DNA of 64,000 nt from Octopus sinensis. Taxonomy: Eukaryota. Position numbers and translations under genes: made by a program. Positions 13,520 to 62,143 of this stretch are shown in pieces. The notes under the pieces are model-generated. The model was not told the origin of the DNA. It was given only the letters and a program-made list of their open reading frames with translations, and searched no databases. The stretch spans positions 56,296,001-56,360,000 of the forward strand of contig NC_043005.1 in the NCBI RefSeq assembly GCF_006345805.1, in the 5' to 3' direction. The first letter of the stretch is position 1, and the number at the start of each line of letters is the position of its first letter.

Positions 13520-13691
13520 TCAGCGAACCAGAGGCGTTTGCTTCAACTGTAGCAATATTGATCTCATACGAGACACGTCTTTTGTGTTTTTGGAATGCTT
13601 AGGGTTGAAGTCACAAAGCCGACAGATTTTCTCCCATTCTTGACCAGCAATGCTCTCTTCACGATCCTTCAGGCTTGCTTCTTCTTGTGCC
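13520..13691 (-). CDS. Clc: Clathrin light chain, last coding exon (AQEEASLKDREESIAGQEWEKICRLCDFNPKHSKNTKDVSRMRSILLQLKQTPLVR*)
   Basis: atgtag| acceptor, phase 2 matching exon 4; TGA at 13522-13520. EWE..CRLCDFNPK...DVSRMRS.L..LKQ is the conserved C-terminus. The five exons sum to 624 nt = 207 aa + stop. Confidence 0.96.
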
Positions 13692-18051: not shown

Positions 18052-18078
18052 TTTTTTTTCTCCAAAGCCTCTGCATGC
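18052..18078 (-). CDS. Clc: Candidate 27-nt Clc microexon (adds HAEALEKKK)
   Basis: About 35-nt pyrimidine tract ending tcctctacag| and consensus donor |gtaagta; phase 2-2, open frame. Confidence 0.68.
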
Positions 18079-22186: not shown

Positions 22187-22358
22187 ATCAGAATGATGGT
22201 CATGCTAAAGAAATAAAATGATCCCTTTAAAAATAAAATTAATCTCTACAGTGGAACTAAAGATAAATAAAGATTACAGACGAATTGACAACAACAATGG
22301 CAACAACAGCAAATGTCTAAAGTCTACTTAGAGTGCGTCGCTACAGTTTTAGTCTTAC

Positions 22359-22397
22359 CCACAAGTGATGTCTGCAAGCTCGGCTGCGGCAGCAGCT
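22359..22397 (-). CDS. Clc: Candidate 39-nt Clc cassette exon (adds AAAAAELADITCG)
   Basis: ttgttcttccacag| acceptor and TGG|gtaaga donor; phase 2-2, open frame, GC-rich island within an AT-rich intron. Confidence 0.68.
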
Positions 22398-22491
22398 CTG
22401 TGGAAGAACAATGAGATACACACTTACAAGTGCACCAAAGACGACGTATAAAGAAATCAGTTTGACATGTTTATATTCAAAGAGATGTTAC

Positions 22492-22530
22492 CGGAGCATA
22501 GGGGAAATAGCTTGGCGAGGAATTACTGAT
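22492..22530 (-). CDS. Clc: Candidate 39-nt Clc cassette exon (adds SVIPRQAISPMLR)
   Basis: catttgtag| acceptor and CCG|gtaaca donor; phase 2-2, open frame, CpG retained. Confidence 0.55.
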
Positions 22531-22627
22531 CTACAAATGTTCACAAAGTTCATAGTGTTTCATGGTGGAGGGAGACAATTTAAGTCAAGATAATAAAAGG
22601 CTTGAAAGCAGGATGAAATTGTATCAC

Positions 22628-22636
22628 CTGTCATCT
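22628..22636 (-). CDS. Clc: Candidate 9-nt Clc microexon (AGATGACAG; adds DDR)
   Basis: Long T tract + tag| acceptor and CAG|gtgata donor; phase 2-2, no stop. No transcript evidence. Confidence 0.5.
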
Positions 22637-24721: not shown

Positions 24722-24833
24722 CGGTTGTTTTCTTTGGTCTTAATAAGCTGTTCTGCCTGATTTTTCAACCAATCTTCAAGCTCTTTCTTTGCAGTTTCAC
24801 GCCATATTTCCTTCTTATTTTCTTCTTCGGCAT
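24722..24833 (-). CDS. Clc: Clathrin light chain, exon 4 (DAEEENKKEIWRETAKKELEDWLKNQAEQLIKTKENNR)
   Basis: ttgtag| acceptor and CG|gtaata donor; 112 nt, phase 1->2. WRE.AKKELEDW...EQL.KTK.NNR helix motif. Confidence 0.95.
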
Positions 24834-35395: not shown

Positions 35396-36059
35396 AGAGG
35401 CAGAAAATGATTAGCTTATGTTGTGAGAAGAGTTAGTGCACTAGAGTTAATTCGGTCAGTTTTTAACAACTTTAACTGCTACGTACCTGTGGTTGGAGGA
35501 GTAACATCTGCAACAGGGGGTTGTCATCTTCAAGACCTATATATATATATATGTGTGTGTGGTCAGTAAAAAGATCAAGGAGTTGGAGACTAATGTAAAG
35601 GTCCCATCAGAAGTCTGATAAGGAGAAATTCGACGAGAAAAAAATTGTTATCTAATTAATTACCCACCAAAGTTGTAGGAACTTGCCACAATTCATTGGA
35701 AAGGGTAAATTTTTTATCATTTGAACCAGAGGCAGAAAATGATGAGCTTATGTTGTGAGAAGAGTTAGTGCACTAGAGTTAATTCGATCAGTTTTGAACA
35801 ACTTTAACTGCTACGTACCTGTGGTTGGAGGAGTAACATCTGCAACAGGGGGGTTGTCATCTTCAAGACCTATATATATATGTGTGTGTGGTCAGTAAAA
35901 AGATCAAGGAGTTATAGACTAATGTACAGGCCCCATCAGAAGTCTGATAAGGAGAAATTCGACGAGAAAAAAATTGTTATCTAATTAATTACCCACCTAA
36001 GTTGTAGGAACTTGCCACACTTCAAAGGGAAAGGGTAAATTTTTTATCATTTGAACCAG
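35396..36059. repeat. Tandem duplication, 2 x 332 bp, each unit carrying a copy of the Clc exon 1 3' end and donor
   Basis: agaggcagaaaatga begins at 35396 and 35728. The units differ by several substitutions and small indels. Confidence 0.92.
35819..35869 (-). CDS. Clc: Candidate 51-nt cassette exon derived from the duplicated 3' end of Clc exon 1 (GLEDDNPPVADVTPPTT)
   Basis: Homologous to 37266-37316, with tatag| acceptor and CAG|gtacgt donor; phase 1-1, frame intact. Pyrimidine tract is weak. Confidence 0.4.
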
Positions 36060-37413: not shown

Positions 37414-37852
37414 TTTGTGAGAATGAAATACGTCAGACAAACACAATCGGCAGTTTCCGTAATCTACCGTCGATTTTCGGCAAAGTGTTCTGATTGGTCT
37501 TATTATCTAACATCGTGATGCACTCAAAACATTTTTCGAATGCGTCCATAGAAACATCCAAAATATGGAATTTTATTGATTGAAAATTACATACTATTAT
37601 ATTTAAGAGATTTACCGTAAAAAAATAATAATGGCAGTGAAATGTTCGTTATTATATCATTGACTATGGCACCAAAAAGTGAAATTTAGCATGAAGTTAG
37701 GTAATAGTGCATCATGACACACCATCAAAACAAAGTCTAAATATAGCACACGCCAAACGTGAGGTGACTTGTAAATATTTCATAACAACTCCTGGGTTAG
37801 CTATTACTTAAAACTCTCTGAATTGTTTACAAAAACGAGCGATGCACTAAAG
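37414..37852. promoter_or_regulatory. Shared (bidirectional) promoter region between Clc and TBCEL
   Basis: Divergent ATGs with 439 bp between them, locally CpG-rich, ATTGG (CCAAT box) at 37493-37497. Confidence 0.7.
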
Positions 37853-38071
37853 ATGGAAACTTGTGTTGAAATATCACGTCAGATCGCTTCTTTGGAATCG
37901 GAGAAAAACAATGTTTACAAGAAATCTTTTACAGATGCTTTGAGAGAAAAATACGGCAGTGGCGATAAAGACTGTAATTACATTGTTGATGGTGTCTTTA
38001 TCAACCTTGTTGTAGGCAGGTCGCCTTCCAAGAACGGTTCCGACGCCGAGTTTGCCCACCTTCGTAATGTG
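37853..38071 (+). CDS. TBCEL: TBCE-like (TBCEL), first coding exon (METCVEIS...KKSFTDALREKYGSGD...GRSPSKNGSDAEFAHLRNV)
   Basis: SFTDALREKY and SPSK resemble human TBCEL SFMQVLCEKY / SPMK. GTG|gtaaga donor, 219 nt, phase 0, joins in frame to 61706. The exact start codon is uncertain. Confidence 0.85.
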
Positions 38072-38114
38072 GTAAGAATTACTAAAACTACCTCACAATT
38101 AACACTACATAATA

Positions 38115-38251
38115 TATGTGTGTGTGTACGAATGTATGTTTATGTGTGTGCATATGTGTGTGTGTACGGTTTATGTGTGTGCATATGTGTGTGTGTGTAC
38201 GAATGTATGTTTATGTGTGTGCATATGTGTGTGTGTACGAATGTATGTTTA

Positions 38252-38302
<51 letters not shown>

Positions 38303-38397
38303 GTATATATATATTTATATATATATATAGATAGATAGATAGATAGATATACATACATACATATATATATAGATATATATATATATATATGCATATA

Positions 38398-39357: not shown

Positions 39358-39424
39358 TTAGATAGATAGATAGATAGAGATAGGTAGATAGAGATAGATA
39401 GATAGATAGATAGATAGAGATAGG

Positions 39425-39484
<60 letters not shown>

Positions 39485-39583
39485 GATAGGTAGATAGATA
39501 GAGATAGATAGATAGAGATAGGTAGATAGATAGAGATAGATAGATAGAGATAGATAGATAGAGATAGGTAGATAGATAGATAG

Positions 39584-39616
<33 letters not shown>

Positions 39617-39745
39617 TAGGTAGATAGATAGATAGAGATAGATAGATAGATAAGATAGATAGAGATTGGTAGATAGATAGAAAGGTAGATAGATAGATAG
39701 ACAGACACACAGACAGATAGATAGATAGACAGACAGACAGATAGA
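39358..39745. repeat. (GATA)n/(GAGATA) compound microsatellite
   Basis: Direct reading. Confidence 0.95.
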
Positions 39746-39872
39746 TGTATAGGCAGTTGTATATATATATAATCTGTGGCTATCAATTTAAATATGTTAA
39801 ACATAAATGTGTTTGGATATATATTACACACACACGAAACTCTCGGCCCTTGAGTCACTTATGTTTTCGCTA

Positions 39873-40389: not shown

Positions 40390-41730
40390 ATTGTTTTCTC
40401 TCTCTCTCTCATATATATCTATCTGTCTCTGTATATACATACCCCCTCTCTCTCTCATCTTTCTATCTATCTGCCTCTGTCCATATATCTCTGTCTTTGT
40501 ATATACATACCTCTCTCTCTCTCTCTCTCATCTTTCTATCTATCTGCCTCTGTCCATATATCTCTGTCTCTGTATATACATACCCCTCTCTCTCTCTCTC
40601 ATCTTTCTATCTATCTGCCTCTGTCCATATATCTCTGTCTCTGTATATACATACCCCTCTCTCTCTCTCATCTTTCTATCTATCTGCCTCTGTCCATATA
40701 TCTCTGTCTCTGTATATACATACCCCTCTCTCTTTCATCTTTCTATCTATCTGCCTCTGTCCATATATCTCTGTCTCTGTATATACATACCCCCTCTCTC
40801 TCTCTCTCTCTCATTTTTCTATCTATCTGCCTCTGTCCATATATCTGTCTCTGTATATACATACCCCCTCTCTCTCTCTCTCTCTCTCTCTCTCATCTTT
40901 CTATCTATCTGCCTCTGTCCATATATCTGTCTCTGTATATGCATACCCCTCTCTCTCTCTCTCTTTCATCTTTCTATCTATCTGCCTCTGTCCATATATC
41001 TCTGTCTCTGTATATACATACCCCCTCTCTCTCTCTCTCTCTTTCATCTTTCTATCTATCTGCCTCTGTCCATATATCTGTCTCTGTATATACATACCCC
41101 CCTCTCTCTCTCTCTCTCTCTCATCTTTCTATCTATCTGCCTCTGTCCATATATCTCTGTCTCTGTATATACATACCCCCTCTCTCTCTCTCTCTCTCAT
41201 CTTTCTATCTATCTGCCTCTGTCCATATATCTGTCTCTGTATATACATACCCTCTCTCTCTCTCTCTTTCATCTTTCTATCTATCTGCCTCTGTCCATAT
41301 ATCTCTGTCTCTGTATATACATACCCCTCTCTCTCTCTCTCTCATCTTTCTATCTATCTGCCTCTGTCCACATATATCTCTCTCTCTCTGTATATACATA
41401 CCCCTCTCTCTCTCTCATCTTTCTATCTATCTGTCTCTGTATATACATACCCCTCTCTCTCTCTCTCATCTTTCTATCTATCTGCCTCTGTCCATATATC
41501 TCTGTCTCTCTCTCTCTCTCTCATCTTTCTATCTATCTGCCTCTGTCCATATATCTCTGTCTCTGTATATACATACCCCTCTCTCTCTCTCTCTCATCTT
41601 TCTATCTATCTGCCTCTGTCCATATATCCGTCTCTGTATATACATACCTCTCTCTCTCTCTCTGTCTCATCTTTCTATCTATCTGCCTCTGTCTCTGTAT
41701 ATACATACCTCTCTCTCTCTCTCTATCTCT
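40390..41730. repeat. Pyrimidine-rich minisatellite, about 60-70 bp unit, roughly 20 copies
   Basis: Unit (ct)n-catctttctatctatctgcctctgtccatatatctctgtctctgtatatacatacccc. Explains the 271-465 aa spurious ORFs. Confidence 0.95.
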
Positions 41731-47551: not shown

Positions 47552-49029
47552 AGTATAGCCTTTCCTTGAAAAGATGTTCCCCTATGCAAAATTTCGACCC
47601 ACTAAATCAGTAGTTCTCAAATTAGTAAATACTACATCACCACCTCCGCTACCGTCAAAAAATTCCTTGTAAGTTAATTTTTTGCACAATATCCTTTCTT
47701 CTTCTCTTCATTGTAGATGAGAAGAGGGTGGCAAGCTGGCAGGCTTGTTGGCACACTGGATAAAATGCTTAACAGCGTTTCTTCGGGCTTTACATTCTGT
47801 GTTCAAATACTGCTGAAGTTGATTCAGCCTTTCATCCTGTTGAACTTGATAAAATAAGCACCAGTTTAATATTGGATTCAATGTAATTAATTTACCCTTC
47901 TCTTGAAAAACTTCTGGCCCTGTGCCACAAAATAGAAAGAGTTATTAATGAGAACATAAAAGTGTTTGCATTTACATAATCCTTCTTCATCTTATTGGTG
48001 GGACAAGTTTTAAGTCATTTTAAATGTATTAAACATGACAATTTGTCTTTCCCCACTTTTGAGTTTTTAAGGGGTTCCTTCCATTAGGGATCTTGTCCCC
48101 ACTTTCAGAAACACTGAGTTCGGTGCAAAAATGTAGTATTACACACTTGCATACACACAAACACACGAATACATACATATATGCAAGCATACACACATAT
48201 ATCAAGAAGATTAGTCATGTATATATTAAGTTACTAATTTGTTTACATACAATATTTATCTCCCTCTCACTCTTTATCACTCTTTCATTCACACTCTGTA
48301 TACACACAGCTACACACACAATACATATAAAATGAGTGTAGATAAACAAATTAAGTAGGTTGTGTGTGTGTATGTGCGTGTGTATGTGTGCGTGTGTATG
48401 TGTGCGTGTGTGTGTGTGCATGAGAAGTTTGTCTGAATATTTGGAGAGAACTTACCTTTCACCTTTAAATTTGAAGCTCCATGCCTCAATCAAGAATTAA
48501 TATTTAAATGCATTTGCACTTTTATAAAGATCATCATCTTCATCTACAGCAGCAACCAATTGTTTGTTAGTTTTTTTTTTAACCAGTTTTCAATACAGTA
48601 GCATTCAATATATCTTTAATATGGGCCAAGGGATCTCTCTACACAGTTACATAACCTACTAGAAACAACATTCATATCTTCCTCAAATGAGGGTCATCTC
48701 AACAGTATTTTAGGTTCCTCTGGGCAAAGTAATGCACTGTGGTGGGGGATGCCTATACACAGTCATAACGTACATAGATTAGCATTGAATCTCCTAGAGT
48801 TATGGGGCCCCTTAGATAACAATCCAGTGTGCCTGTACTTCAAAATGACCCCATCTTGAATCACATTTTGCTGTCTTAAAAAGATACACATTGGCTAATG
48901 TAACCCATGATGCACTAAATATGAAAAAAATACAAGGTGTTCATAATTGGAACTCTTTTGATCATAGGTCTGCTAAATAAAAACTGACCTGGGGCCAGTT
49001 GCAATAGTATTGCTTATCTCCAGATATTT

Positions 49030-49400
49030 CCAGCCTCTCTCCAGTTCTTTTTCAACATCTTCCTGGAGAACATCATGCAGGAAACACTTGAAGACCTCTC
49101 ACCCCACTATTTCCATTGGAGGAAGACCCATTTCCAACCTGCACTTTGCTGATGATATTGACTTGTTACGAAGCAGTGAAGCAGAACTACATGACCTCAC
49201 CACCAGGCACAGAAAAGTATCAGGAGCATACATGATGGAGATCAGCCTAGAAAAGAACAAGATCCTGCTTAGTGGTAACAACCAAAACACAACTAACATC
49301 ATGCCAAACAGTGAGAAACTTGATGAAGTGGACACCTTCGAGTACCTAGGATCCACTTTGACCAAGCACAGCAAATTCAGAAGGAGATGACAAAATTGGA
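49030..49400 (+). mobile_element. RTE LINE reverse transcriptase fragment
   Basis: ISIGGRPISNLHFADDIDLL ... LDEVDTFEYLGS (FADD and YLGS motifs). Confidence 0.85.
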
Positions 49401-50589: not shown

Positions 50590-50990
50590 ACTTCTTATAG
50601 AAGAGAATTAATGCATTCAAGCTTTGGTGTTGGAGAAGACTTTTACGGATTCCATCATCAGCGAGGCTCACCAATGGAGAAGTTCTTAAACAGATCAAGC
50701 CGAAACTGTTGCTAGAAGCTAGGATCACCAAGCATAGAATGACATATTTTGGTCATATTATGCGGAGAAAATCCCTAGAGAAAGACATCATGCTCGGAAT
50801 GGTCAGTGGCAAGAGAGGAAGAGGCCGACCAAGAACCCGCTGGCTTGACACCATCAAGAGTGATACGGGAATGGACATAGCCAATCTGAAGGAAGCGGCC
50901 CAGGATAGAACTGGCTGGAGGACACTGATCCATCGAGTAACCGAGAGTCGACTTCGACTGAGCAGATAGATAGATAGATACTTCTTATAC
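50590..50990 (+). mobile_element. 5'-truncated RTE LINE 3' end, little decayed
   Basis: MTYFGHIMRRKSLEKDIMLGMVSGKRGRGRPRTRWLDTIK, followed by an (AGAT)n tail. Confidence 0.85.
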
Positions 50991-61377: not shown

Positions 61378-61705
61378 TATATACTTGAGTATAACCAGCT
61401 GAAATTGCAAAGATAATCTGGAACTCAACTGAGGAAAGAAAACTCCAAATGACCCGTCCTTGTTTTCTTTGTATTGTCTATATGGATGTTTTGTTGTCCC
61501 TTTCTTGTATCACCTAACTGTCTGGATATTTTTGCGTTCTTGTCCCATTTTGTATTTTTGTGTGTGTGCGTGTTTGTATATATGTAGATATATATATATA
61601 TATATATGTTTATGCATGTGTGTGTGTTTATATATATTTGTATATATATATATTTACTTATATGTAACAACTCCAATAAAATTTTTTCAAACATTTCATT
61701 TTCAG

Positions 61706-61897
61706 GTCTTAAGCCAATATGAAATCGACTATGCTGGGATACCCATCAGAGGTTTGAGTGCCCTTTGTCCTAATGTTATTGACCTTGACTTGTCTAGCAA
61801 TTTGCTATCATGCTGGTCGGAGATACTACCTCTTATTGCACAACTACCTTGTTTAAAGTTTGTCAATCTCAGCCACAACAAGATAAACAATCACAAT
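61706..61897 (+). CDS. TBCEL: TBCEL coding exon 2, LRR region (VLSQYEIDYAGIPIRGLSALCPNVIDLDLSSNLLSCWSEILPLIAQLPCLKFVNLSHNKINNHN)
   Basis: ttttcag| acceptor and AAT|gtaagt donor; 192 nt, phase 0-0. LDLS.N.L..W.E and L.F.NLS.N leucine-rich repeats as in TBCE/TBCEL. No CAP-Gly domain upstream, which favours TBCEL. Confidence 0.9.
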
Positions 61898-62143
61898 GTA
61901 AGTAATATCTAATAATCTACTGTTATTGTTGTTGTTGTTGTTGTTATTATTTGTAAGGCAGCAAGCTGGTAGACTCTTAGCAGTATTTCATCTGTCTTTA
62001 CATTATGAGTTCAAATCCCACCAAGGTTGACTTTGCCTTTCATCCTTTCGGGGTCTATAAAATAAGGACCAGTTAAGCACTGGAGTCAATGTAATTGACT
62101 TACTCTTTCCCTCAGAATTGTTGGTTTGTGCTAAAATTTGAAA

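What the first reader, a model, noticed from the sequence alone, without database searches (positions are those of the whole stretch)
22359..22636. Cluster of three in-frame microexons (9, 39, 39 nt) at the neuronal-insert site of clathrin light chain
Seen: three AG...GT-bounded segments on the Clc strand, separated by 97- and 94-nt introns. All are phase 2-2 multiples of 3, and no inclusion combination creates a stop. They sit in a CpG-retaining GC-rich patch of an 11-kb AT-rich intron and encode ..KENNR-DDR-SVIPRQAISPMLR-AAAAAELADITCG-. Established: vertebrate LCa/LCb have neuron-specific 30/18-aa inserts right after the equivalent ..NNR. Inference: an independently evolved, combinatorial, probably neural splicing cassette at the same position, with sequence unrelated to the vertebrate inserts. 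The two 39-nt exons could be mutually exclusive.
Basis: partly seen in the sequence, partly recalled or inferred. Interest (0 to 1): 0.85.

Follow-up and report, generated by a model that had tools for sequence, protein, structure and literature searches.

The report
Octopus clathrin light chain cassette exons
Only one of the three proposed mini-exons in the octopus clathrin light chain gene is real: a 39-base exon that is already annotated and is conserved from octopus to cuttlefish; the other two look like chance open segments, and the gene's true second optional exon lies 4.3 kb further on.

Summary
The three AG...GT segments exist exactly as described, on the minus strand: 9 nt at 22636-22628, 39 nt at 22530-22492 and 39 nt at 22397-22359. 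All are phase 2-2, and every inclusion combination stays open.

Those bare criteria are weak. They are met by 360 segments in the same 11-kb intron and by 324 on its antisense strand.

Only the third segment (mE3, AAAAAELADITCG) has support:
- A Logan-assembled RNA contig splices it exactly.
- It is in public annotations of O. sinensis, O. vulgaris and O. bimaculoides.
- It keeps its splice sites and flanking intron in Argonauta and cuttlefish, and all 5 substitutions fall at third codon positions.

The 9-nt (DDR) and first 39-nt (SVIPRQAISPMLR) segments have none:
- They are in no annotated or assembled protein.
- They have no counterpart in Argonauta or cuttlefish.
- The 39-nt one is 40 nt, and so frameshifting, in O. 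bimaculoides.

The real partner exon was missed. It is 27 nt (HAEALEKKK) at 18078-18052 and is conserved in Argonauta and cuttlefish. All four states (skip, mE3, H, both) are annotated, so the two are not mutually exclusive.

Lineage-specific inserts at this same ..NNR| junction also occur in gastropods, bivalves and a nemertean. Neural specificity is untested.

The parts
22359..22397 (-). mE3: a real 39-nt alternative cassette exon, phase 2-2, encoding (R)AAAAAELADITC(G). Acceptor ttcttccacag|, donor GG|gtaaga.
   Evidence: RNA contig L004 (Logan, SRR16213286) joins 24722 to 22397 and 22359 to 13691. The exon is present in O. sinensis X1, X2 and X4, in O. vulgaris records, and in O. bimaculoides X1 and X4. 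It is identical in O. bimaculoides. It has 1 synonymous change in Argonauta and 4 changes in cuttlefish, all at codon position 3, and the splice sites are kept.
18052..18078 (-). H exon: a real 27-nt alternative cassette exon, phase 2-2, encoding (R)HAEALEKK(K). Acceptor cctctacag|, donor AA|gtaagt.
   Evidence: It is in O. sinensis X1, X3 and X4, O. vulgaris and O. bimaculoides X2. The Argonauta orthologue is HAEASDEKK at L002 13598-13624. The cuttlefish positional orthologue is HSSEMGSDQ at L003 58094-58121; it is annotated and also in a Logan transcript, P0137.
22492..22530 (-). mE2: a 39-nt open AG..GT segment (SVIPRQAISPMLR). Most likely not an exon.
   Evidence: It is in no annotated or assembled protein. 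Its splice signals are mediocre, with a pyrimidine fraction of 0.55 and donor CG|gtaaca; 22 sense and 12 antisense segments in the intron are as good. In O. bimaculoides it carries a 1-nt insertion, giving 40 nt and a frameshift to an early stop, plus an R-to-H change. It has no counterpart in Argonauta or cuttlefish.
22628..22636 (-). mE1: a 9-nt AG..GT segment (AGATGACAG, giving ..R-DDR) behind a T16 run. Unsupported as an exon.
   Evidence: Its acceptor context is good (T16 + ag) and its donor is moderate (gtgata). It is in no protein record. It is identical in O. bimaculoides, but 9 nt at 93% background identity says little. It is absent from Argonauta and cuttlefish.
22398..22491 (-). The 94 nt upstream of mE3: branch-point and pyrimidine region, with a GTAAGT (22427-22422) 30 nt before the acceptor.
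   Evidence: It is 100% identical to O. bimaculoides, against an intron mean of 93.1%. The proximal ~55 nt, including TTTGGTGCACTTGTAAG, is conserved in Argonauta.
22189..22358 (-). Conserved intronic block downstream of mE3, with four TGTTG motifs at +51 to +70. A candidate splicing-control region.
   Evidence: blastn aligns window 22439-22189 to Argonauta at 77% and 22416-22326 to cuttlefish at 83.5%. These are the only alignable parts of the intron in those species.
24722..24833 (-). Constitutive Clc exon (D)AEEENKK...KTKENN(R), ending CG|gtaata (phase 2).
13520..13691 (-). Coding part of the last Clc exon: (R/G/K)AQEEASLKDREE...CDFNP...TPLVR, then stop.

Best explanation
The window carries the single clathrin light chain gene (Clc) of an Octopus sinensis/vulgaris-type genome on the minus strand. 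In the 11-kb intron after the codons ..KENN(R) there are two genuine in-frame cassette exons:
- mE3, 39 nt, 22397-22359, AAAAAELADITCG.
- H exon, 27 nt, 18078-18052, HAEALEKKK.

They are used independently, giving four C-terminal variants: skip, +13, +9 and +22 residues.

Shown here:
- Their use in transcripts and annotations.
- Their conservation, with splice sites and order kept, from octopods to a cuttlefish.
- Codon-position-3-only substitution in mE3.

Inferred:
- The inserts lengthen the long heavy-chain-binding helix just before the C-terminal part that sits at the triskelion vertex.
- By analogy with the vertebrate neuronal inserts at the same residue, they would tune how the light chain affects lattice curvature and budding. 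Use may be tissue-specific, possibly neural.

They sit in the intronic sequence next to mE3, part of which is conserved within Octopus because it flanks a regulated exon.
For: Gene model and junctions:
- Transcript L004 aligns exon by exon and includes mE3 with exact junctions.

Annotated isoforms:
- NNR-AAAAAELADITCG-AQEE in O. sinensis X2, O. vulgaris, and O. bimaculoides X1 and X4.
- NNR-HAEALEKKK-AQEE in X3 and O. bimaculoides X2.
- Both exons in O. sinensis X1 and X4.
- Neither exon in X5.

Conservation:
- Against O. bimaculoides, mE3 +/-60 nt is 99.4% identical and H +/-60 nt is 98.6%. The intron mean is 93.1%.
- In Argonauta and cuttlefish, mE3 with its flanks is the only alignable stretch of the intron.
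- All 5 substitutions in mE3 are at third codon positions, 4 of them synonymous.
- An unbiased splice-site filter on the Argonauta intron returns exactly two candidates, the mE3 and H orthologues.
- Cuttlefish has the same order: NNR exon, mE3, H-type exon, last exon.

Against mE1 and mE2:
- No protein of 46-371 residues in the 5.8-billion-cluster collection contains DDR or SVIPRQAISPMLR at this site.
- mE2 is 40 nt in O. bimaculoides and would truncate the protein.
- The best matches to either segment in Argonauta or cuttlefish are at shuffle level.
- mE2's splice signals are matched by 22 sense and 12 antisense segments.

Structure:
- An AlphaFold2 model of O. sinensis X1 puts one helix through residues 114-200. 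It covers mE3 (169-181, pLDDT about 92) and H (182-190, about 85).

Vertebrate analogy:
- Vertebrate inserts lie near the trimerisation domain and change knee conformation, cage size and budding (PMC7519287).
Against: - No tissue-resolved expression data could be reached, so neural or any other tissue specificity of mE3 and H is not shown.
- Absence of mE1 from annotations is weak evidence. 9-nt exons are often missed by aligners and gene predictors, and mE1 has a very good pyrimidine tract.
- The O. bimaculoides 1-nt insertion in mE2 sits in a C run and could in principle be an assembly error. Against that, two independent assemblies (window and O. vulgaris) agree on C4.
- In cuttlefish, mE3 is conserved in the genome but appears in no annotated or assembled protein I saw.
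- The helix prediction is for an isolated chain with a shallow alignment over the inserts.
Confidence: 0.8

Rival explanations
1. One reading: all three segments (9, 39, 39 nt) are real cassette exons that form a combinatorial, probably neural, cluster. The first two have simply been missed so far.
For: All combinations stay in frame. The segments lie in a CpG- and GC-enriched patch. mE1 has a T16 tract and an acceptable donor. The region 22700-22300 is 97% identical to O. bimaculoides against a 93% background.
Against: - No record contains either peptide, although O. sinensis has 6 isoforms, O. vulgaris 11 records and O. bimaculoides 4.
- mE2 is frameshifted in O. bimaculoides.
- Neither has a counterpart in Argonauta or cuttlefish, while mE3 and H are kept.
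- mE2's signals are at chance level.
- 18% of intronic 100-nt windows reach 97% identity.
- The mE2 peptide has two prolines inside what is otherwise predicted to be a continuous helix.
Confidence: 0.05
2. Only mE1 (9 nt, DDR) is an additional genuine Octopus-specific microexon, missed by annotation because of its size. mE2 is not an exon.
For: It has the best pyrimidine tract in the intron, and only 2 sense and 0 antisense segments score as well. It is identical in O. bimaculoides, including the donor. Very short exons are commonly missed by annotation pipelines (general knowledge).
Against: - It is absent from Argonauta and cuttlefish.
- 9 identical bases are expected about half the time at 93% identity.
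- A T run followed by AG is common in an AT-rich intron.
- No UGC motif lies near the acceptor.
- No record carries it.
Confidence: 0.12
3. mE3 is not an independent invention. It descends from an old insert exon shared with other molluscs, or even with vertebrates. The shared core would be x-D-[IV]-[TI]-x-G: octopus LADITCG, heterobranch NDVTESQG, vertebrate ADVIGYV/ADIIGYV.
For: All inserts sit at exactly the same junction and phase. A short D-[IV]-[TI]..G resemblance is visible by eye.
Against: - The resemblance covers 3-4 residues in 10-18 and has no statistical weight.
- Physella has only one cassette in this intron and Haliotis has none with credible signals.
- Many lineages carry quite different inserts: KHNM/RGNM, YSSSSLT, VNQAEFFKERE, HDETETKR.
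- By position and the leading His, the cephalopod H exon is a better candidate orthologue of the molluscan K-H-N.. exon. That would leave mE3 as a coleoid addition.
Confidence: 0.12

Closest known systems
Vertebrate neuron-specific inserts of clathrin light chains (CLTA exons 5 and 6, 18 + 12 residues; CLTB exon 5, 18 residues)
   Same: The insertion point is the same, directly after ..K(A/E)NNR, and so is the split-codon phase. The exons are in-frame cassettes used combinatorially (CLTA has four variants; octopus has four). The location is between the heavy-chain-binding helix and the C-terminal segment (PMC8712872).
   Different: There is no credible sequence similarity. The sizes differ (13 and 9 residues). 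There is a single gene rather than the CLTA/CLTB pair. Neuron specificity is not shown for octopus. The two octopus exons lie 4.3 kb apart.
Annotated lineage-specific inserts at the same junction in other lophotrochozoans: heterobranch K[CHE]NDVT[ED]SQG, bivalve KHNM/RGNM/RDNM, Littorina YSSSSLT, nemertean VNQAEFFKERE
   Same: Same junction, same phase, short in-frame cassette. The cephalopod H exon shares a leading His and a similar size (27 against 30 nt) with the heterobranch exon.
   Different: The sequences differ between lineages. mE3 has no evident counterpart outside coleoids. None of these inserts appears in the papers I could search.
SRRM3/4 (eMIC)-dependent neural microexon programme of bilaterians
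   Same: These are short, in-frame, conserved alternative exons in an endocytic gene. Their flanking intron sequence is more conserved than the rest of the intron.
   Different: mE3 is 39 nt, above the usual 27-nt limit. The only UGC upstream of mE3 is at -37, and none lies within 70 nt of the H acceptor. Regulation and tissue pattern are unknown.

Membership tests
Clathrin light chain (Pfam PF01086) gene | Consensus EEDPAA.FLA box, heavy-chain-binding helix and C-terminal CDFNPK..LKQ.PL segment | tested here: met
   The motifs were found exon by exon on the minus strand. The spliced product matches Octopus CLC records, which carry PF01086.
CLC insert-site cassette (as in vertebrate CLTA/CLTB) | In-frame alternative exon(s) inserted directly after ..NNR, before (A/S)xEEAF | tested here: met
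   mE3 and H are present or absent in annotated isoforms and in one RNA contig, at that exact residue.
CLC insert-site cassette (as in vertebrate CLTA/CLTB) | Sequence homology to the vertebrate 18-residue ([VI]AD[EK]AFY[KQ]QP..D[VI]IGYV) or 12-residue insert | tested here: not met
   The alignment shows no similarity beyond an AD[IV] tripeptide.
CLC insert-site cassette (as in vertebrate CLTA/CLTB) | Neuron-specific inclusion | not testable with these tools
   No tissue-resolved reads were reachable. The one supporting run (SRR16213286) has no metadata here and appears in no searchable paper.
Functional coding cassette exon (applied to mE1 and mE2) | Presence in transcripts or annotated products | tested here: not met
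   There is no protein with DDR or SVIPRQAISPMLR at the site, either among full-length hits and their cluster members or among short fragments.
Functional coding cassette exon (applied to mE1 and mE2) | Frame and splice sites preserved in related species | tested here: not met
   mE2 is 40 nt in O. bimaculoides, which gives an early stop. Neither segment is found in Argonauta or cuttlefish. mE1 is preserved only in the close relative O. bimaculoides.
eMIC/SRRM-dependent neural microexon | Length of 27 nt or less, with UGC motifs close upstream of the acceptor | tested here: inconclusive
   H is 27 nt with no UGC within 70 nt. mE3 is 39 nt with one UGC at -37. mE1 is 9 nt with none. The motif rule is recalled from the vertebrate and fly literature and has not been calibrated for cephalopods.

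The most novel reading that the evidence does not exclude
The ..NNR| junction of clathrin light chain is a bilaterian hot spot. Unrelated cassette exons have arisen there repeatedly, in vertebrates, coleoid cephalopods, heterobranch gastropods, bivalves and nemerteans. On this reading, the coleoid mE3 exon, kept since the octopus-cuttlefish split, is a nervous-system exon that tunes clathrin lattice properties for synaptic vesicle recycling. That would be a convergent solution in the two lineages with the largest brains.
Probability: 0.3. Interest if true: 0.6.

Novelty: new member of a known kind. Interest (0 to 1): 0.3.

Why it matters
As a discovery in this window it matters little. The real exons are already in public annotations, and two of the three proposed exons do not hold up.

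The wider pattern is more useful. Many animal lineages have put different short optional exons at exactly the same point of the clathrin light chain. The octopus one has been kept, codon by codon, since octopuses and cuttlefish diverged.

That makes the insertion point, between the heavy-chain-binding helix and the vertex-binding tail, a natural experiment on how light chains tune clathrin coats. It would be a neat example of recurrent evolution of tissue-specific exons in the same gene if inclusion proves to be neural. The papers I could search treat the inserts as a vertebrate feature (PMC8712872, PMC7519287).

Tried and rejected
- A search for short protein fragments (46-147 residues) carrying any of the inserts found nothing.
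- Looking up run SRR16213286 in papers, to learn the tissue, found nothing.
- The supplement of the 2026 preprint on tissue-specific splicing, which includes O. bimaculoides, is not held.
- Papers on eMIC microexons mention ClC-a, not clathrin.
- An Rfam scan of the whole gene gave no RNA family that could explain the conserved intron blocks.
- I tested whether the mE1-mE2 stretch is a repeat or transposon copy. It is single-copy in the 2.72-Gb genome.
- O. vulgaris was tried as an extra comparison. It is 99.5% identical and identical across the region, so it is uninformative except to confirm the C4 run in mE2.
- Look-ups of Aplysia, Pecten and Haliotis short isoforms failed because only the longest product of a gene is indexed. 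Physella X1 and Haliotis X1 worked.
- I considered that mE3 arose by duplication of the start of the last exon (AAAAAELAD against AQEEASLKD, 4 of 9 identical). I set this aside because nucleotide identity, counted by hand at about 31%, is at chance level.
- No UGCAUG (Rbfox) sites lie near any of the four segments.
- My first exon coordinates were off by one for mE3, the KENNR exon and the last exon. They were corrected.

Full report
**1. Gene and coordinates**

Six-frame motif searches place a clathrin light chain gene on the minus strand. Its parts are:

| Part | Window coordinates (minus strand) |
|---|---|
| Exon 1 coding part | 37413-37266 |
| Optional 51-nt exon | 35870-35820 |
| Exon ADGF..VPQ | 30184-30114 |
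| Exon TNGPTD..LEHK | 27418-27298 |
| Exon (D)AEEENKK..KENN(R), ending CG\|gtaata | 24833-24722 |
| Intron, 11,030 nt, 31.8% G+C | 24721-13692 |
| Last exon (G GCA CAA..), coding part | 13691-13520 |

The genome is 2.72 Gb in 13,516 contigs. Its protein is identical to O. sinensis and O. vulgaris records.

**2. The observation**

- mE1: ttttttttttttttttag|AGATGACAG|gtgata, 22636-22628.
- mE2: tttgtag|ATCAGT..GCTCCG|gtaaca, 22530-22492, 39 nt.
- mE3: ttcttccacag|AGCTGC..TTGTGG|gtaaga, 22397-22359, 39 nt.
- The gaps between them are 97 and 94 nt.

All inclusion combinations reach the normal C-terminus. The patch is enriched in G+C (42.8%). It holds 6 CpG per 300 nt against an intron mean of 1.26.

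The criteria used are not selective:
- 360 AG..GT segments of 6-60 nt in the intron are multiples of three and open in phase 2.
- The antisense strand has 324, and shuffles give about 292.
- With a crude splice-signal filter, mE2 is ordinary (22 sense and 12 antisense segments as good).
- mE1 and mE3 are near the top, with 2 sense and 0 antisense each.

**3. What public proteins and transcripts show**

I searched with a query that carried all three inserts. It returned every cephalopod CLC cluster, and I read all cluster members. The forms found at this junction are:

| Form after NNR | Where found |
|---|---|
| NNR-AQEE (skip) | O. sinensis X5 and others |
| NNR-AAAAAELADITCG-AQEE | O. sinensis X2, several O. 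vulgaris records, O. bimaculoides X1 and X4, Logan RNA contig from SRR16213286 |
| NNR-HAEALEKKK-AQEE | O. sinensis X3, O. vulgaris, O. bimaculoides X2 |
| Both inserts | O. sinensis X1 and X4 |
| mE3 + H, ending ..KKK | O. sinensis X6; reads through the H donor, AAG TAA |

- The RNA contig aligns to the window with junctions 24722^22397 and 22359^13691.
- HAEALEKKK maps to a 27-nt exon at 18078-18052 (cctctacag|G CAT..AAA AA|gtaagt), 4.3 kb downstream of mE3.
- No record contains DDR or SVIPRQAISPMLR.
- A second search tuned to short fragments also found none.

**4. Comparative evidence**

I fetched the orthologous loci of O. bimaculoides (L001), Argonauta hians (L002), the cuttlefish Acanthosepion pharaonis (L003) and O. 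vulgaris (L008).

*O. bimaculoides*
- The whole intron aligns at 93.1% identity.
- mE3 +/-60 nt is 99.4% and H +/-60 nt is 98.6%.
- mE2 is 94.9% and mE1 +/-30 nt is 97.1%. 18% of intronic windows reach 97%.
- mE2 has an extra C (C5 for C4). This makes it 40 nt, so inclusion would shift the frame into an early stop.
- The window and O. vulgaris agree on C4.

*Argonauta and cuttlefish*
- The only alignable parts of the intron are 22439-22189 (Argonauta) and 22416-22326 (cuttlefish), that is, mE3 and its flanks.
- mE3 has one synonymous change in Argonauta. It has four changes in cuttlefish (AAAAAELAEITCG).
- All five changes are at codon position 3, and cacag| and |gtaaga are intact.
- A blind splice-signal filter on the Argonauta intron returns exactly two candidates: mE3 and a 27-nt exon HAEASDEKK, the H orthologue.
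- Cuttlefish has an annotated and transcribed 27-nt exon HSSEMGSDQ in the same order.
- Neither species has anything like mE1 or mE2. Pattern and peptide matches are at shuffle level.
- The mE1-mE2 stretch is single-copy in the genome, so it is not a repeat.

**5. Interpretation**

- mE3 and H are genuine, independently used cassette exons, conserved across coleoids.
- mE1 and mE2 are most likely chance open segments. They lie in sequence that is partly conserved within Octopus because it flanks mE3.
- mE1 keeps a small residual chance, since 9-nt exons are easily missed.
- The suggestion of two mutually exclusive 39-nt exons fails.

**6. How it probably works**

*Structure model*
- An AlphaFold2 model of O. 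sinensis isoform X1 predicts one helix from residue 114 to 200.
- It runs through mE3 (169-181, pLDDT about 92) and H (182-190, about 85).
- So the inserts would lengthen the heavy-chain-binding helix by 13, 9 or 22 residues just before the C-terminal part.
- The mE2 peptide, with two prolines, would fit that helix poorly.

*Vertebrate analogy*
- In vertebrates the inserts at this residue lie near the trimerisation domain.
- They alter the knee conformation of neighbouring triskelia, cage size, lattice quality and budding.
- Loss of either light chain impairs synaptic vesicle replenishment (PMC7519287).
- By analogy the octopus inserts would tune lattice properties. This is inference, and tissue specificity is untested.

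*Candidate control elements*
- The conserved 55 nt upstream of mE3, with a GTAAGT at 22427-22422.
- Four TGTTG motifs at +51 to +70 downstream of mE3.
- No Rbfox sites were found, and only one UGC (at -37) precedes mE3.

**7. Comparison with what is known**

Aligning 37 CLCs shows inserts at exactly this junction in several lineages:

| Lineage | Insert |
|---|---|
| Vertebrates | 18 + 12 residues; a further LCPSLAR in a pufferfish CLTB |
| Heterobranch gastropods | K[CHE]NDVT[ED]SQG |
| Bivalves | KHNM / RGNM / RDNM |
| Littorina | YSSSSLT |
| A nemertean | VNQAEFFKERE |
| Cephalopods | mE3 and H |

- Physella has one cassette in this intron and Haliotis has none with credible signals.
- The octopus sequences show no credible similarity to the vertebrate ones.
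- The event is one of many at a recurrent site and is already annotated.
- The reviews and papers I could search describe the inserts as a vertebrate feature and do not mention the invertebrate ones.
- A 2026 preprint reports widespread recurrent evolution of neural exons in the same genes but does not mention clathrin.

**8. Verdict**

- One of the three exons is real and already known as data, and a second real exon was missed.
- Interest is modest.
- The most novel reading still open is convergent neural use at a bilaterian hot spot.

Noticed in passing
It is annotated in three Octopus species and conserved in Argonauta (HAEASDEKK) and cuttlefish (HSSEMGSDQ). O. sinensis isoform X6 reads through its donor (AAG TAA). 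That gives a light chain truncated before the C-terminal domain.
   Followed up: yes
window 35820-35870 and about 35487-35536 (minus strand): Two tandem copies of an optional N-terminal exon (GLEDDNPPVADVTPPTT). The exon itself resembles the end of exon 1 (GLEDDNFPVADAPQPTA). The second copy is 50 nt here, one C short, and so frameshifting. It is an intact 51 nt in O. vulgaris, where isoforms with two copies are annotated. O. bimaculoides has one copy. This could be a real difference or a homopolymer error in this assembly.
   Followed up: partly
window 22422-22427 and 22288-22308 (minus strand): A consensus 5' splice-site hexamer (GTAAGT) lies 30 nt upstream of the mE3 acceptor, and its first five bases (GTAAG) are conserved in Argonauta. 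Four TGTTG motifs lie 51-70 nt downstream of mE3, conserved in Argonauta and partly in cuttlefish. They could be splicing-control elements, such as a U1 decoy or a GU-rich enhancer.
   Followed up: partly
window about 23995-23795, 23345-23120, 23045-22920, 17895-17645, 15720-15545, 15020-14820: Other intronic blocks are at least 98% identical to O. bimaculoides, against a 93% background. They do not align to Argonauta or cuttlefish, and their nature is unknown.
   Followed up: no
window 39359-39746 and 40415-41729: There is a (TAGA)n microsatellite of about 100 copies and a CT-rich 73-nt minisatellite of about 14 or more copies. These explain the extreme GC and AT skew seen at 39-42 kb.
   Followed up: partly
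window 37775-38338 (+) and 61433-61912 (+): An open frame starting METCVEISRQ.. lies head-to-head with Clc exon 1, and a leucine-rich-repeat exon lies further on. In O. bimaculoides, Argonauta, cuttlefish, O. vulgaris, Physella and Haliotis the gene next to the Clc 5' end is likewise a divergent LRR protein. So this gene pair looks conserved across molluscs.
   Followed up: partly
window 48977-49390 and 50601-50969 (+): Open frames that look by eye like retroelement (reverse-transcriptase-like) fragments, probably decayed LINE copies; no family search was run on them.
   Followed up: no
proteins P0106, P0109, P0025 (not in the window): The vertebrate 18-residue insert (VADEAFYK..) and the nemertean insert (VNQAEFFKERE) both resemble the start of the following constitutive exon (AAEEAFV.. 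/ AAEQAFVQERDE). This hints that some inserts at this site arose by duplication of the next exon's 5' part.
   Followed up: no
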